From the IMG/VR virus record IMGVR_UViG_3300023083_000001, positions 1 through 64,000 of that record: DNA of 64,000 nucleotides; one strand, given 5' to 3'. Position numbers and translations under genes: made by a program. Of the stretch, positions 8,379 through 37,504 are shown one piece after another. How positions within the stretch are numbered: the stretch's first letter is position 1; each line of letters starts with the position of its first letter. The notes beneath the pieces were generated by a model. That model was not told the origin of the DNA. It was given only the letters and a program-made list of their open reading frames with translations, and ran no database searches.

Positions 8379-9155
8379 ATGCCGCTCATTGAAGCACTGC
8401 CGTACGAAGAACGGTTGGAGATGATCCTCGGGTTGGATCGTGATACCGCCTTGCATCACTTGATCGCCAAACAAGGCGTAGCGATCCAGAACGTCGAAGG
8501 GTACTGTCATAACCTGCGCTTCGCTCACGTCAGCATGCCTCGGGTGAAGATGGAAGCTGATCGTCTCAAGCTGCACTTCGTTCAGTACGGTCTTGTCCGT
8601 CAGCGTCGCAGCGGCATGCTGCTCAGCTACAAACGTCCATTGAAAGGTGGTGAACTCAGAATTGCAGGTTCTGATTCGGTAGGTGTGGGCGGTCATGTCG
8701 ATGGTATCGACTATTGTGTTGACCCACGTGGTGTGCTGAGTTTGTACGCCACACTCAATACGACTGCCTGGCGTGAGTATTGGGAAGAGATCGCATTCTC
8801 CTACACTCACGGCGGTTCGGTGCGCTGGACCCAAGCGGAGTTGATGGAGAGATCCGAGCTGTTCTTTCATGGCTTTGTCATCGACCGAACTGAAGATGTC
8901 GGTATGACTCACCTGGGCGTCTTCACGACACTGTGGGTCGACGATGACGTCTTGATTGACTCAGGTGAGGACGCGGTCATCGACCCTCACTGGATCACCG
9001 TAGAGGACGCCTTGGAGAAACACGCCAACGGTGAATACAAGTACGAGAACTGGTCCAAGTTCCTGTTGCAACATGTCCACGACCATCCACGCAGTGTAGC
9101 GCCGATCAACGTGGCAGAAACGCACCGCTCGTACAGCTTCCTGCAACCCAAGTAA
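8379..9155 (+). CDS. Nudix-fold hydrolase (predicted phosphoesterase)
   Basis: SVGVGGHVD...AWREYWEEI Nudix box variant, VGMTHLGV, ENWSK. Confidence 0.75.
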   Translation: MPLIEALPYEERLEMILGLDRDTALHHLIAKQGVAIQNVEGYCHNLRFAHVSMPRVKMEADRLKLHFVQYGLVRQRRSGMLLSYKRPLKGGELRIAGSDSVGVGGHVDGIDYCVDPRGVLSLYATLNTTAWREYWEEIAFSYTHGGSVRWTQAELMERSELFFHGFVIDRTEDVGMTHLGVFTTLWVDDDVLIDSGEDAVIDPHWITVEDALEKHANGEYKYENWSKFLLQHVHDHPRSVAPINVAETHRSYSFLQPK

Positions 9156-9635
9156 ACAACATAAAACAACGCCCCATTTCGGTGGGGCGTCTATGGCCTT
9201 CGAGGATTCCCATGCCAGAAATCAAAGCTCCGTGGGCAGTCAGTTTCAAAGAAGCTACTAACGATGAAATCGAATATAGCGTCGTTCGTATTGACAACGA
9301 TCACGGTTTTAAGTCGTGGCGTTGGATTGAACCTGACCGTAAATTGATTGTGGCGTGTTCGCGTGATGCGGATTACAAATACCCACAGTTTCTTAAGGAC
9401 CGTTTGAAAGTAATCGCTATCGATTACGCTAACCACCTGAACGAGCAGGAAGGTCAGGGCGATTTTAACGTCATGTGGCATGAAGACACAAAACCACCTC
9501 ACGCAGTAGAGGTTGTGCCTGAACCGCTGAGTACAGAACAGCAAAATCTAGCCGTCGAATTATTTCGGGCGCAGCGTAAATTGGTTAACGATATCACCGC
9601 CTCCTACCCACCCTACATTCTTACGGAACCCAAAG

Positions 9636-32800: not shown

Positions 32801-33161
32801 ACGGACATCCTTGAGTTCTGTAATCTACATACTATTCAGAATTCAAGTATATCTACCCACCTGCAAGTCTCCTTGCAGAACAGACTACATCATCACCGAC
32901 TCCTGTCGGTGCTACGCGCTTCCCACCACTTGGCGGTACTCTACTCATCACCTATGTCATCATCCATGTAGGTGCTTTCGATAGTCGTTGAACCCGATTC
33001 GTGATACGTTAGACGTACTTTAGAACCTCGGCTGCTGATTGTCCTGTAATGATAGATTTTCAAGCATTCACGCTCACCGTTTCCAGTCACGTTGTAGCTC
33101 TATCACCTTTAGGAGTTTCCAGCAATTCGCGTAGTTTATTAACGTAACCTCATTGATGTTT
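32302..33161 (-). mobile_element. group I intron (IA2-like), 860 nt, in nrdJ
   Basis: P1 GUAACCUU/GAGGUUAC with U-G at the splice site; P AAUUGCUGGAA, Q AAUCAGCAG, R UUCAACGACUA, S GAUGUAGUC; P3 CUACGCG/CGCGUAG; terminal G; removal restores FCNL|TETN in frame. Confidence 0.93.
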
Positions 33162-34220
33162 AAGGTTACAGAATTGAAAGCCTGAACGACCGTCTTCGGT
33201 GTAAGCCCGCAGACCGATCTCGACACACGGGTTGTAACCCTGCTCGCTGTCTTCTGCGAAGATGAAGCCAGGCTCGCCGAATTCACGAACGGACTTCATG
33301 ATGGTTGCCCACTCAGAACGACCCAGCTCACTGCGGATCAGCAGTGCAGAGTTGTTAGAACGACCACGTTGCGGGTTGGTGGTGTACCAATCGCCTGTCT
33401 TGGCGGTGAGCATTTCTTTGTCATCTTTGGAGAAGATGCAGATCGTTGCAGCGCGCCGTATACCGCCTGACAGAACAGCGTCAGCCATGTGCATGACGAA
33501 GTCGTACGCGTGGATCGGTTTGAGCTGCAATTCAAGGTCTGGGTGTGCGATGCCATCAAGTAGTTCGCGACACTTCTCCAGAGAGCGTTGCAGGCCGTCA
33601 GGACCCGGTGCTTTAAAGCCGCCGGAGATCAATGCGCCGCGTGGACGGACTTCGGAGTAATCGAAGTGCACCTGAGTGTTCTTGTACTCAGGGAACGTAC
33701 CGCCGTCAACGAAGTAGCTGGATAGCAGAACGCCGAATGCGTCAGACCAACCTTCAATGCTGTCCGGCACGACGAAGACTTTGGCTTTGTCTTTACCAGG
33801 TGCAGTGACTTTCGGCAACTTGGCGATGTGGTGCTTTTGTACGGAGAACCCAACACCGCAGCCTGCCAGCAACAGATACATGGCGTGTTGGAAGAACTCG
33901 GTACGGTCGCAGTAGCTGAACGAGCAGTTGTACATACGCGCTTCGTGCTGGAAGATCTGAGGACCACCAAACTGCAAAGCACGCTGGGAGCCAAGTACGG
34001 CTTTATCTTTGTAAGCCAATTCAGCGAAGGCAATTGCCTCTTCCAACTCAGGTGACATTACCGCTGCATACTTCTCGCGGTGCATGTCCATCACACGCTC
34101 TACCGCCTCATCCCACGTCTCATACCGCCCAAGCTTCTCGGAGAACCGAGAATAACCCATGAAAAACTTGGAATCAGCCAACATGTCTTTGGCTAGGCTA
34201 GGTTGGAAGTTAGAATTCAT
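33162..34220 (-). CDS. nrdJ: class II ribonucleotide reductase, exon 1
   Basis: GGAG RBS before ATG 34220; YSR...ETWDEAVERV, MYNCS, GCGVGFS, GGIRRAA, GEPG, NPCVEI (thiyl Cys), FCNL. Confidence 0.9.
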
Positions 34221-35787: not shown

Positions 35788-36177
35788 ATGACTGATAAGA
35801 ACATCGAAGTAGGCAGTGTTGTCTACCTCAAGAGTGGTTCTCCTGGTTTGACTGTATTGGCCATTTCCGGTGATAGAGGCGGGCAATACCAAGATAAAGA
35901 TGGCGAACGGGTGCGTGGGTTGATGCCTAACCACGTACGAGTCACTTGGGAAGGTCCTCAGGGACTGGCTGAGTTCGAGAACTTCCCCACTGCTTGCGTA
36001 TCCTTGACCAAACCCGTCTGCCCTGACAGTGAAGCAACACTGGCTCGTATCAGGGAACTGCGTGAAATGGTTGCCAACATTCCAAAACGTGAAGTGCCGA
36101 TCAGTGGTCAGCGCCATTGGTACGTACAGCGCGGTGAAGTGCTCGATTGCTTCGATGAAGCCTTGGGTACTTTGTAA
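35788..36177 (+). CDS. DUF2158/YodC-like SH3-fold protein
   Basis: IEVGSVVYLKSGSPGLTV...VTW...FP..CV. Confidence 0.6.
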   Translation: MTDKNIEVGSVVYLKSGSPGLTVLAISGDRGGQYQDKDGERVRGLMPNHVRVTWEGPQGLAEFENFPTACVSLTKPVCPDSEATLARIRELREMVANIPKREVPISGQRHWYVQRGEVLDCFDEALGTL

Positions 36178-36184
36178 AGCGTTC

Positions 36185-36324
36185 GAAGCAGCACGGTGTG
36201 CCAGAGACGGTTGAATGGTGAATAGATGGAGTAACGTCCATTACAGAGCTACAGTGAAGACAGTGTCCGCCTGGGACTATACTGAATCTAACCGTGGGTT
36301 CGAATCCCATCGCCGTGTTGCTTC
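36185..36324 (+). ncRNA. tRNA-like RNA 1 (anticodon arm replaced by ~70-nt domain)
   Basis: 14-bp terminal stem GAAGCAGCACGGTG/CGCCGTGTTGCTTC; class-II-type D arm TG-CCA-GAGACGGTTGAA-TGG; T arm GTGGG-TTCGAAT-CCCAT. Confidence 0.75.
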
Positions 36325-36328
36325 AAAC

Positions 36329-36574
36329 CTCGTTCGCCAGCAGATAAGTCTGGCAAACATTGAGTGTGATGTGCCTAAACTACCCAGGCGCCGGACTGTA
36401 CGTCACCTCTCTTATCGATCCCTACGACCATACCCAGTGAGTCTATTTACTGAATTGCGAGGGAAGTCCACAGCCGCCGCACCCCGATAGGATGTAACCA
36501 CTGGAATAGACTCTGGAGGTTACCGCCCGATACTGACCTGAAAGCGTAAGAAGGTCCGGTTGGTCACGAACGAG
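36329..36574 (+). ncRNA. ~250-nt structured RNA with kissing loops and pseudoknot
   Basis: Closing stem CTCGTTCG/CGAACGAG; complementary hairpin loops GTCTAT and ATAGAC; CCGGACT/GGTCCGG long-range pair; followed by a UUCG hairpin. Confidence 0.65.
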
Positions 36575-36588
36575 ATACCCGTGGCACG

Positions 36589-36610
36589 TTACCTCCCTTC
36601 GGGGAGGTAG
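36589..36610 (+). terminator. UUCG-capped hairpin (terminator or processing/stabilising stem)
   Basis: TTACCTCCC-TTCG-GGGAGGTAG. Confidence 0.6.
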
Positions 36611-36622
36611 CACTTATTATAT

Positions 36623-36726
36623 ACCGAATGCGCTCGAAAGAGCCAGCCAGTAAGGGTGGGTCAGTTCCGCCTCGCTGACCGAGGGTAGGTGCGAAAGGAG
36701 TGGGGTTCAATTCCCCATGATTCAGT
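36623..36726 (+). ncRNA. tRNA-like RNA 2 (degenerate acceptor stem)
   Basis: T arm TGGGG-TTCAATT-CCCCA; GCTC-GAAA-GAGC in D position; GGTCAG/CTGACC internal stem. Confidence 0.5.
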
Positions 36727-36827
36727 CTTAGGGACAATAATCCTTAAGTAACTCTGGTGAGACAAATGGTCCGGGCGACACGCCCGTTAAACGCACCGGC
36801 GGAATCCGGTCGAAGTGTAAAGTTTCT

Positions 36828-36912
36828 GGAGAGGTTCCCGAGCGGTCAAAGGGGGCAGACTGTAAATCTGCTGTCGCGTACTTCGAAGGTTCGAATCCTT
36901 CTCTCTCCACCA
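36828..36912 (+). tRNA. tRNA-Tyr (GTA)
   Basis: GGAGAGG/TCTCTCC acceptor, GCAGA-CTGTAAA-TCTGC anticodon arm, long V arm, GAAGG-TTCGAAT-CCTTC, encoded ACCA. Confidence 0.97.
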
Positions 36913-37015
36913 ATTACGATCCTTTGTAACTGCACGCGACTTGCCATTGAGCGAACGTCATTCGGGCAGAAGCATTAACTTGGCGCTGTTGGCGCTGGGA
37001 GGGTCACCTTTACTC

Positions 37016-37101
37016 GGATCGATAGGGAAGTGGCTTAACCCAACGGCCTGCAAAGCCGTCTTCGAAAGATACCGTCAGTTCAAATCTGACTCGATCCTCC
37101 A
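37016..37101 (+). tRNA. tRNA-Cys (GCA) with long variable region
   Basis: GGATCGA/TCGATCC acceptor, U73, CCA; ACGGC-CTGCAAA-GCCGT; GTCAG-TTCAAAT-CTGAC. Confidence 0.92.
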
Positions 37102-37115
37102 ATTTAGGAATCGGC

Positions 37116-37268
37116 ATGGTTACTGTAATGAAGCTGGATCTCAGTAAAGTCAATTCGGTTCCGCCTGAGTTTCATCTGGAAAAGATCCGTCAATTCCAGG
37201 AAGCTCAAACCAAGCTTGAACAGGTCTGCAAAGAGAAAGGTATTCCTGTACCGATCATGGTCTGTTAA
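37116..37268 (+). CDS. small hypothetical protein (50 aa) inside the RNA cluster
   Basis: AGGA RBS; MVTVMKLDLSKVNSVPPEFHLEKIRQFQEAQTKLEQVCKEKGIPVPIMVC. Confidence 0.6.
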   Translation: MVTVMKLDLSKVNSVPPEFHLEKIRQFQEAQTKLEQVCKEKGIPVPIMVC

Positions 37269-37278
37269 TAGTTTCAAT

Positions 37279-37406
37279 CCCTCGGTCCGCAGTTGGGCGG
37301 GGTCACTGTAAGGCGATACGATACGGGAAGAGGTCGAACAAGTTTTGATAGGTCGTTCGTCCGTCGCTGGAAGTTACCGGGAGTTCGACACTTCCACTTA
37401 GGGCCA
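37279..37406 (+). ncRNA. tRNA-like RNA 3 with encoded CCA
   Basis: CCTCGGT/ACTTAGG acceptor + G + CCA; CCGC-AGTTGG-GCGG D-like arm; GGGAG-TTCGACA-CTTCC T arm; ~78-nt insert closed by GGTCACT/AGTTACC. Confidence 0.7.
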
Positions 37407-37410
37407 AACA

Positions 37411-37444
37411 ACATAGACGCCCGGCCTAGTGCCGGGCTTTATGC
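37411..37444. repeat. dispersed CATA-GC hairpin-TATG element
   Basis: ACATAGACGCCCGGCCTAGTGCCGGGCTTTATGC. Confidence 0.85.
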
Positions 37445-37452
37445 TGCTAATG

Positions 37453-37480
37453 TTTTAAAGCAATACATTACAGTGGTGAG
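37453..37480 (+). promoter_or_regulatory. putative phage early promoter
   Basis: TTTTAAAGCAA-TACATTAC-N5-TGAG. Confidence 0.7.
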
Positions 37481-37504
37481 TCCATCTATCACACAGGTGT
37501 CTAA

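What the first reader, a model, noticed from the sequence alone, without database searches (positions are those of the whole stretch)
36329..36574. ~250-nt RNA with a perfect 6-bp kissing-loop pair and a long-range pseudoknot
Seen: terminal helix CTCGTTCG(36329)/CGAACGAG(36567); hairpin GCCAG/CTGGC; helix GTGATGTG(36366)/TACGTCAC(36399) enclosing CCGGACT(36391), which can pair with GGTCCGG(36553); CTTATCG/CGATAGG helix. Hairpin CAGTGA-[GTCTAT]-TTACTG (36435-36452) and hairpin GTAACC..CTGGA-[ATAGAC]-TCTGG..GGTTAC (36494-36523) have exactly complementary loops. A UUCG hairpin follows. Inference: this degree of tertiary organisation is typical of ribozymes or self-assembling RNAs; the loops could also pair between molecules, as in pRNA-type multimers. 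I cannot match it to a family I recognise.
Basis: partly seen in the sequence, partly recalled or inferred. Interest (0 to 1): 0.85.

Follow-up and report, generated by a model that had tools for sequence, protein, structure and literature searches.

The report
Orphan structured RNA in phage tRNA island
A jumbo phage from leaf litter carries, among its tRNA genes, a roughly 250-base non-coding RNA gene of no known family; a second, diverged copy keeps its two main hairpins through compensating mutations, but what the RNA does is untested.

Summary
The two 6-nt loops (GUCUAU 36441-36446, AUAGAC 36506-36511) are exactly complementary. That happens in 3 of 1000 shuffles.

One second copy exists. 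It is a 1330-nt contig from the same leaf-litter metagenome, 93% identical, with unrelated flanking genes but again beside tRNA genes. Between the copies, 16 substitutions break none of the proposed pairs. Three pairs changed on both sides and stayed paired (two in hairpin 1, one in hairpin 2). Both loops are unchanged.

The overlapping ORF 36215-36490 is not coding. G·U pairs place the RNA on the + strand, the strand of the tRNAs. A conserved UUCG terminator-like hairpin follows it.

So this is a real structured RNA gene of about 250-290 nt. It matches no Rfam family and is missing from the phage's nearest relatives.

- The kissing interaction is conserved but not tested by covariation.
- The "pseudoknot" is no better than chance and competes with a strong local hairpin.
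- The outer 3 bp of the terminal helix are not conserved.
- Ribozyme or multimer function is untested.

Immediately downstream (36635-36815) lies a separate, widespread phage RNA family with much stronger support, also absent from Rfam.

The parts
36329..36574 (+). Homology with the second copy (L118) starts at 36332.
   Evidence: No Rfam hit.
36329..36336 (+). P1 5' strand. Only 36332-36336 (GTTCG) is conserved.
   Evidence: Pair probability of the core is 0.82 in the window and 0.70 in L118.
36567..36574 (+). P1 3' strand (CGAACGAG).
36336..36354 (+). Small hairpin (G)CCAG/CTGG(C).
   Evidence: pair probability 0.89. Invariant between the copies.
36366..36406 (+). Helix GTGATGTG/TACGTCAC enclosing a variable loop and the CCGGACT segment (36391-36397).
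   Evidence: Three substitutions fall in its loop (36381, 36386, 36390) and none in the stem.
36411..36417 (+). Helix E 5' strand (CTTATCG).
   Evidence: pair probability 0.94/0.82.
36485..36491 (+). Helix E 3' strand (CGATAGG). The C36484>T change in L118 adds an A-U pair with A36418.
36435..36452 (+). Hairpin 1: stem CAGTGA/TTACTG, loop GTCTAT (36441-36446).
   Evidence: Two compensatory pairs: G-C>A-U at 36437/36450 and U-A>C-G at 36438/36449. The loop is invariant.
36494..36523 (+). Hairpin 2: outer stem GTAACC/GGTTAC, inner stem CTGGA/TCTGG, loop ATAGAC (36506-36511).
   Evidence: One compensatory pair, A-U>U-A at 36497/36520. The loop is invariant.
36535..36556 (+). Local hairpin GACCT/AGGTC. 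It competes with the proposed pseudoknot strand at 36553-36559.
   Evidence: pair probability 0.97/0.92. The substitution at 36542 lies in its loop.
36588..36611 (+). UUCG-capped, GC-rich hairpin with a T-rich tail: terminator-like. It is conserved in L118 up to that contig's end.
36191..36319 (+). Context: tRNA-like element with a 46-nt insertion, immediately upstream. It is absent from the second copy.
36635..36815 (+). Context: a separate, widely conserved phage RNA family, not part of the finding.
36828..37101 (+). Context: tRNA-Tyr (36828-36912) and tRNA-Cys (37016-37101), the phage's only canonical tRNAs.

Best explanation
It is a discrete phage gene for a highly structured non-coding RNA of about 250-290 nt. 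It is transcribed on the + strand within the phage's tRNA/ncRNA island and ends at the UUCG-capped terminator-like hairpin.

The RNA folds into a multi-branched body: a short closing helix, helix 36366/36406, helix 36411/36491, hairpin 1, hairpin 2 and hairpin 36535/36556. Hairpins 1 and 2 display 6-nt loops that are exact complements and most likely pair with each other, either within one molecule or between molecules.

I infer that it acts in trans as a folded RNA, as a scaffold, decoy or binding partner, in the same genomic niche as GOLLD and ROOL. It behaves as an independent module, because it sits in two unrelated gene neighbourhoods.

Shown: the RNA-level structure of hairpins 1 and 2, the lack of coding signal, the strand, and the modularity. 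Inferred: transcript ends, loop-loop pairing, trans action and any biological role.
For: 1. The second copy, L118, is 93% identical over 36332-36608. Of 16 substitutions, none breaks a proposed pair and 3 pairs changed on both sides. Permutation gives P(no broken pair)=0.0007 and P(3 or more compensatory)<=5e-5. For the 10 substitutions outside hairpin 1 and the outer stem of hairpin 2, P=0.025.
2. It is not coding. ORF 36215-36490 has no Pfam or PHROG hit and no homologue among 5.8 billion proteins. Its first 38 codons have no counterpart in L118. Substitutions fall at codon positions 1/2/3 in the ratio 4/5/1, whereas in the neighbouring gene 35788-36177 all 5 strain variants are at third positions.
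3. G.U pairs that would be A.C on the other strand (36439/36448, 36502/36515, 36503/36514, 36370/36402, 36412/36490) place the RNA on the + strand, the strand of the tRNAs.
4. Both copies independently predict the same nested fold.
5. Loop complementarity is rare in shuffles, 3/1000, and identical in both copies.
6. Terminator-like hairpin 36588-36611 is conserved with the element.
7. The element lies in the largest ORF-poor gap of the 258-kb genome, next to tRNA-Tyr and tRNA-Cys. In L118 it follows tRNA-Asp, tRNA-Leu and one ORF. Neither L118 ORF occurs in this phage or its relatives.
8. ROOL and GOLLD are phage RNAs 'often near tRNA islands' that are held together by kissing loops (PMC12286853).
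Against: - Only two diverged copies and one strain allele exist, so covariation rests on 3 pairs.
- The loops, P1 core, helix C, helix E and the pseudoknot strands never vary, so they are conserved but unproven as pairs.
- The MFE z-score is only -1.7.
- No RNA-seq run could be listed, so there is no direct evidence of transcription or of the transcript ends.
- No sigma-70-like promoter was found on the + strand, although jumbo phages often use other promoters.
- The closest relatives, with 86% identical RNR, lack the element, so it is dispensable for that phage lineage.
- No function is shown.
Confidence: 0.55

Rival explanations
1. Self-assembling RNA. Loop 1 of one molecule pairs with loop 2 of the next, hand in hand as in phi29 pRNA or the quaternary kissing loops of ROOL and GOLLD, giving dimers or closed rings.
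For: Two different, mutually complementary 6-nt loops sit on covariation-supported arms and are unchanged while the stems mutate. In ROOL, a kissing loop first read as intramolecular proved to be intermolecular (PMC12286853). The genomic niche is the same, a phage tRNA island.
Against: Nothing here tells intra- from intermolecular pairing. The RNA is much smaller than ROOL or GOLLD, and no CM hit to pRNA, ROOL or GOLLD was found. With only 12 loop positions at 7% divergence, unchanged loops are expected about 40% of the time.
Confidence: 0.15
2. Cis-acting leader of riboswitch or attenuator type. The folded domain senses a ligand or a tRNA and controls read-through of terminator 36588-36611 into the downstream RNA and the tRNA-Tyr and tRNA-Cys genes.
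For: The layout is a structured domain, a 13-nt spacer, a terminator-like hairpin and then downstream genes on the same strand. Kissing loops are common in riboswitch aptamers (established knowledge: the lysine, purine and cobalamin classes). The 3' strand of hairpin 2 (GGAGGTTAC) could pair with the terminator's 5' strand (GTTACCTCC).
Against: No riboswitch or T-box model hit at E<=10. The candidate antiterminator pairing shrinks to GGAGG/CCTCC in L118, because the changes at 36589-90 and at 36497/36520 do not compensate each other. In L118 the element follows an ORF, and its downstream side is unknown.
Confidence: 0.12
3. A ribozyme, for example a reduced RNase P-like RNA that processes the island's tRNAs, or a self-cleaving processing element.
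For: It lies in a tRNA island. The fold is multi-branched with a closing helix.
Against: No RNase P, group I or self-cleaving family hit even at E<=10, while the search found a real group I intron at 32861-33171. No P4 partner lies 3' of the CR-I-like string. Its only complement (GGACT 36393-97) lies 5' of it, the wrong topology.
Confidence: 0.05
4. No function of its own: an intergenic spacer or decayed remnant whose structure is fortuitous, or a DNA-level signal.
For: Extremely rare, with two copies in one metagenome. Absent from the nearest relatives. Modest MFE z-score.
Against: Three compensatory double changes and no disruptive change among 16 substitutions. The element is conserved as a unit, with a sharp 5' boundary, in unrelated contexts. 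In the second sample's strain allele (run X2), divergence over 36371-36697 (about 1%) is lower than in the adjacent coding gene (about 5%). Conserved G.U pairs argue for RNA hairpins and against DNA hairpins.
Confidence: 0.08
5. The 91-codon ORF 36215-36490 is a real gene, and the apparent structure is incidental.
For: An ATG-started ORF of 91 codons exists. The 3-nt deletion at 36471-73 is in frame.
Against: No family and no homologue other than itself. The N-terminal 38 codons overlap a tRNA-like element and are missing in L118. 9 of 10 substitutions fall at codon positions 1 or 2. The deletion lies in a GCCGCC repeat, where any slippage is 3 nt.
Confidence: 0.02

Closest known systems
ROOL and GOLLD RNAs (large ornate phage and prophage RNAs)
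   Same: Encoded by phages, located at tRNA islands, multi-branched, with kissing loops as key contacts and no known function (PMC12286853).
   Different: About 250 nt against about 580 and over 800 nt. No sequence or CM similarity. Known from only two copies. Oligomerisation untested.
phi29-type packaging RNA (pRNA)
   Same: A phage RNA with two mutually complementary loops in one molecule that could pair between molecules.
   Different: From my own knowledge, pRNA belongs to small phi29-like phages, lies near a genome end, and uses 4-nt loops. Here the phage is a 258-kb jumbo phage, the gene is in a tRNA island, the loops are 6 nt, and no pRNA model hit was found.
The conserved ~180-nt phage tRNA-island RNA immediately downstream (36635-36815)
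   Same: Same island, same strand, also absent from Rfam and also a stand-alone structured RNA.
   Different: Unrelated in sequence and structure. It is widespread (15 members held) and strongly covarying. In other phages it occurs without the finding's element.
Riboswitch aptamers with loop-loop contacts (lysine, purine, cobalamin)
   Same: A multi-helix junction whose two arms kiss, followed by a terminator-like hairpin.
   Different: No model hit, no conserved antiterminator, and no regulated coding gene downstream.
Bacterial RNase P RNA
   Same: tRNA context, a closing helix, and a CR-I-like 11-mer.
   Different: No model hit. The P4 topology is absent. It is smaller than any bacterial RNase P RNA.

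Membership tests
Any Rfam 15 family | A covariance-model match at the gathering score, or at least E<=10 | tested here: not met
   No hit on 36178-36827 or on the L118 copy. tRNAs and a group I intron elsewhere in the window served as positive controls.
RNase P RNA | CR-I/CR-V forming the P4 pseudoknot, with the 3' strand near the 3' end | tested here: not met
   A CR-I-like string lies at 36459-36469, but no complementary strand lies 3' of it (inspection). No RNase P model hit.
RNase P RNA | Cleaves pre-tRNA 5' leaders | not testable with these tools
   Needs an in vitro assay.
Group I intron | Conserved P3-P8/P7 core recognised by the model, and flanking exons that join into a gene | tested here: not met
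   Intron_gpI hit 32861-33171 but not this element. The flanks are a tRNA-like element or an ORF stop on one side and a hairpin on the other, not split exons.
phi29 pRNA | Two complementary loops within one RNA | tested here: met
   GUCUAU and AUAGAC, 6 of 6 complementary.
phi29 pRNA | Sequence and structure family, in a phi29-like genome context with a packaging motor | tested here: not met
   No model hit. The genome is a 258-kb phage with terminal repeats, and the gene sits in a tRNA island.
ROOL / GOLLD | Match to the family models, and a size of about 580 or over 800 nt | tested here: not met
   No hit. The element is about 250-290 nt.
ROOL / GOLLD | Phage-encoded, near tRNA islands | tested here: met
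   The family property is taken from PMC12286853.
ROOL / GOLLD | Homo-oligomeric assembly | not testable with these tools
   Needs native gels or cryo-EM.
Riboswitch / transcription attenuator | Mutually exclusive terminator and antiterminator, conserved among homologues | tested here: inconclusive
   A terminator-like hairpin is present. The only candidate antiterminator loses most of its pairs in L118. L118 ends inside the hairpin.
Conserved tRNA-island RNA family (36635-36815) | Match to model R2 | tested here: not met
   R2 matches 36635-36815 only. R1, the model of the finding, matches none of that family's loci.

The most novel reading that the evidence does not exclude
A new class of small phage RNA that assembles by itself. 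The two covariation-supported arms present complementary 6-nt loops that link molecules hand in hand into dimers or rings. This would make it a roughly 250-nt relative in principle of pRNA and of the ROOL and GOLLD nanocages, carried as a mobile module in phage tRNA islands. Alternatively, it could be a new ribozyme class.
Probability: 0.12. Interest if true: 0.8.

Novelty: new variant of a known kind. Interest (0 to 1): 0.45.

Why it matters
Phage tRNA islands are emerging as reservoirs of elaborate RNAs of unknown function, such as GOLLD and ROOL. This element would add a much smaller and therefore more tractable example. Its pair of complementary loops is simple to test with compensatory mutants, native gels and SHAPE. 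If the loops bridge molecules, it would be a minimal natural self-assembling RNA. If they pair within one molecule, it would be a new compact tertiary fold. Its rarity (two copies) limits general importance for now. The neighbouring widespread ~180-nt family may be the more important lead from this locus.

Tried and rejected
Homologue searches that found nothing further:
- blastn against 50,697 GenBank phages gave only T-arm-like 20-mers.
- BLAST and model R1 against the four nearest jumbo-phage records and 100 loci held gave none.
- IMG/VR scans: the flanking ORF; GCGAGGGAAGTCCACAG, 0 hits; the two 9-mers with a gap, 8 AT-rich chance matches; the minus-strand ORF; the L118 ORF; the two pseudoknot strands with a gap, 2 unrelated hits.
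- GTDB genomes: ORF-derived patterns gave none. The pseudoknot-strand pattern gave 22 hits that are chance or an unrelated protein gene with a fixed 183-nt span.
- Searches of 5.8 billion proteins with the spurious ORF and with both flanking ORFs each returned only the query itself.
- No RNA run could be listed.

Ideas considered and dropped:
- RNase P-like: a CR-I-like 11-mer, but the wrong topology and no model hit.
- Group I intron: no exons and no core.
- Cobalamin-like 'GGGAAG' core: no model hit.
- Retron msr/msd: no reverse-transcriptase domain in the ORFs scanned.
- tRNA-Tyr anticodon mimic: GACTGTA at 36394-36400 equals the 7-mer in tRNA-Tyr, but it is partly inside helix C and the match is post hoc, roughly p=0.03 by my own rough estimate.
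- Antiterminator between hairpin 2 and the terminator: not conserved.
- Intermolecular pairing with the neighbouring RNAs and tRNAs by duplexfold: z from -1.1 to +1.8, nothing notable.
- An alternative long-range helix from RNAalifold, 36426-34 with 36558-65: pair probability only 0.03-0.07 in either copy.

Full report
WHERE IT IS. The window is the first 64 kb of a 258,357-bp viral record with direct terminal repeats, a jumbo phage assembled from a leaf-litter metagenome. The finding lies in the largest ORF-poor gap of the genome, 36178-37504. On the + strand, in order, this island holds:
- a tRNA-like element with a 46-nt insertion, 36191-36319, seen only with ARAGORN's intron option;
- the finding, 36329-36574;
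- a UUCG-capped GC-rich hairpin with a T-rich tail, 36588-36611, which scores as terminator-like;
- a conserved RNA, 36635-36815;
- tRNA-Tyr (36828-36912) and tRNA-Cys (37016-37101), the only canonical tRNAs of the phage.

THE OBSERVATION. The loops GUCUAU (36441-46) and AUAGAC (36506-11) are exact complements.

In 1000 dinucleotide-preserving shuffles folded by MFE, two hairpin loops shared a perfect complement of 6 nt or more only 3 times. A perfect inverted repeat of 9 nt or more anywhere in the sequence occurred 66 times.

The global folding energy is unremarkable, with z = -1.7 to -1.8.

Runs of 7 consecutive pairs with at most one G.U are common by chance: 6.6 windows on average in shuffles against 13 here, and 6% of shuffles reach 13. 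The 7-bp 'pseudoknot' (36391-97 with 36553-59) therefore carries no weight on its own. The same CCGGACU segment can equally pair with 36347-54 or, over 5 bp, with AGUCC at 36465-69. The pseudoknot's 3' strand also overlaps a local hairpin (36535-39 with 36552-56) that has pair probability 0.92-0.97 in both copies.

IS IT A KNOWN RNA? No Rfam 15 family matches 36178-36827 at the gathering score or at E<=10. In the same searches the tRNAs and a group I intron at 32861-33171 were found. The second copy gives no hit either.

HOMOLOGUES. blastn against GenBank phages finds nothing for the element. The nearest relatives found through the class II ribonucleotide reductase (86% identical; records of 253,921 and 188,198 bp) lack it by BLAST and by covariance model. 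Their tRNA cluster also sits elsewhere relative to the reductase gene.

I translated the spurious ORF 36215-36487 and used it as a multi-anchor probe of 241 million metagenome records. That returned the source contig and one other, L118, 1330 nt, from the same metagenome.

L118 aligns from window position 36332 to the contig's end at 36608 with 93% identity. Upstream of 36332 it is unrelated. Its layout is a 105-codon ORF, tRNA-Asp, tRNA-Leu and a 100-codon ORF whose stop lies 8 nt before the element. Neither ORF occurs in this phage or its relatives, nor anywhere else among 5.8 billion proteins for the 100-codon one.

Contigs of a second leaf-litter run (X2) carry a strain allele with three of L118's differences (36390 G>A, 36453 A>G, and a 3-nt deletion at 36471-73). 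In that allele the element is still joined to the downstream RNA. All further scans of IMG/VR, GTDB genomes and the protein collection returned nothing (see Tried and rejected). The element is therefore very rare, and it behaves as a module with a sharp 5' edge that coincides with the conserved core of P1.

WHAT THE SECOND COPY SAYS. Inside 36332-36574 there are 16 substitutions and one 3-nt deletion.
- Six substitutions form three double changes that keep a pair: G-C>A-U (36437/36450) and U-A>C-G (36438/36449) in hairpin 1, and A-U>U-A (36497/36520) in the outer stem of hairpin 2.
- C36484>U turns an A.C next to helix E into A-U.
- G36390>A turns a possible G.U into A-U, either with U36560 or in the alternative small hairpin 36371/36391.
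- All the others, and the deletion, fall in predicted loops or linkers (36356, 36381, 36386, 36453, 36531, 36532, 36534, 36542).
- None breaks a proposed pair.

Random placement of 16 substitutions leaves all pairs intact in 0.07% of trials for nested helices plus pseudoknot plus kissing. It gives three or more compensated pairs in at most 0.005% of trials. For the ten substitutions outside hairpin 1 and the outer stem of hairpin 2, the figure is 2.5%.

Hairpins 1 and 2 are thus established. The other helices are conserved and thermodynamically favoured in both copies, but they are not proven.

Both hairpin stems are real, and the 9-nt complementarity crosses the outer stem of hairpin 2. Any pairing between the two segments must therefore be a loop-loop contact and not a simple nested helix. 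The loops are identical in both copies. With 12 positions at about 7% divergence, that is expected about 40% of the time, so the contact is conserved but untested.

NOT CODING, AND WHICH STRAND.
- The 91-codon ORF has no Pfam or PHROG match and no homologue.
- Its first 38 codons overlap the tRNA-like element and have no counterpart in L118.
- Its substitutions sit at codon positions 1, 2 and 3 in the ratio 4:5:1. In the neighbouring gene 35788-36177, all five strain variants are at third positions.
- The minus-strand ORF 36443-36613 shows a ratio of 5:4:5.
- Several conserved G.U pairs would be A.C mismatches on the other strand, so the RNA is read on the + strand, like the tRNAs.

MOST LIKELY NATURE. 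It is a stand-alone gene for a compact, multi-branched RNA of about 250-290 nt. It is expressed with the tRNA island and ends at the conserved terminator-like hairpin. Two of its arms most likely touch through their loops.

Its closest analogues in kind are the phage tRNA-island RNAs ROOL and GOLLD. Their functions are also unknown, and their kissing loops turned out to be partly intermolecular (PMC12286853). It is not a member of either family.

NEXT DOOR. The RNA at 36635-36815 belongs to a family I could assemble from 15 phage sequences: Pseudomonas phages D6, OBP and Holyagarpour, Salmonella SA002, Shewanella SXP01 and nine IMG/VR contigs.
- 97% of cells are paired.
- 31 of 40 pairs show changes on both sides.
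- Slid controls give 34-42% pairing.
- In other phages it stands alone, often directly between tRNA genes, and never with the finding's element. The two are separate modules.
- It too has no Rfam match.

VERDICT. The sequence observation holds. The RNA is real and new as a family, and the kissing loop is plausible but unproven. The pseudoknot and the outer part of the terminal helix are not supported, and the ribozyme or multimer reading is open. Interest is moderate: the object is clean and easily testable, but it is known from two copies only.

Noticed in passing
window 36635-36815 (+): Member of a widespread ~180-nt structured RNA family of phage tRNA islands, with 15 members held. 97% of cells are paired and 31 of 40 pairs are compensatory. 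Features: two T-arm-like hairpins with UUCGAUU loops, a hairpin with a CAAUAA loop, and an invariant GUAACUCUGGUGAGACAAAUGG. No Rfam 15 match. It is often flanked directly by tRNA genes. Probably the stronger discovery at this locus.
   Followed up: partly
window 36191-36319 (+): tRNA-like element with an 8-bp acceptor stem, a good T-arm (GTGGG-TTCGAAT-CCCAT), weak D and anticodon arms, and a 46-nt insertion. ARAGORN calls it tRNA-Pro(GGG) only with its intron option. It has no homologue in GenBank phages beyond the T-arm.
   Followed up: partly
L106 8790-9250 (relative G001, 253,921-bp phage): This relative's tRNA cluster holds tRNA-like genes with insertions in the anticodon arm, about 55 nt in the clearest case at about 9126-9250. 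That one carries a T-loop-like hairpin and an encoded CCA. This suggests that insert-bearing tRNAs or tRNA mimics are a trait of this phage group.
   Followed up: no
window 32861-33171 (-): A group I intron (Rfam 73.7 bits) splits the class II (B12-dependent) ribonucleotide reductase gene. The relatives G001 and G002 have the gene uninterrupted.
   Followed up: partly
window 36459-36469 and 36394-36400 (+): GAGGGAAGTCC matches 10 of 11 bases of the RNase P CR-I consensus, recalled from memory. GACTGTA equals the 7-mer of the anticodon arm of the phage's own tRNA-Tyr. Both observations are post hoc and neither is supported by structure or by a model hit.
   Followed up: partly
window 37102-37504 (+): A further 400 nt of ORF-poor sequence follows tRNA-Cys and ends in a perfect 7-bp GC hairpin (37419-37437, terminator-like on both strands). 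It has no homologue in GenBank phages.
   Followed up: no
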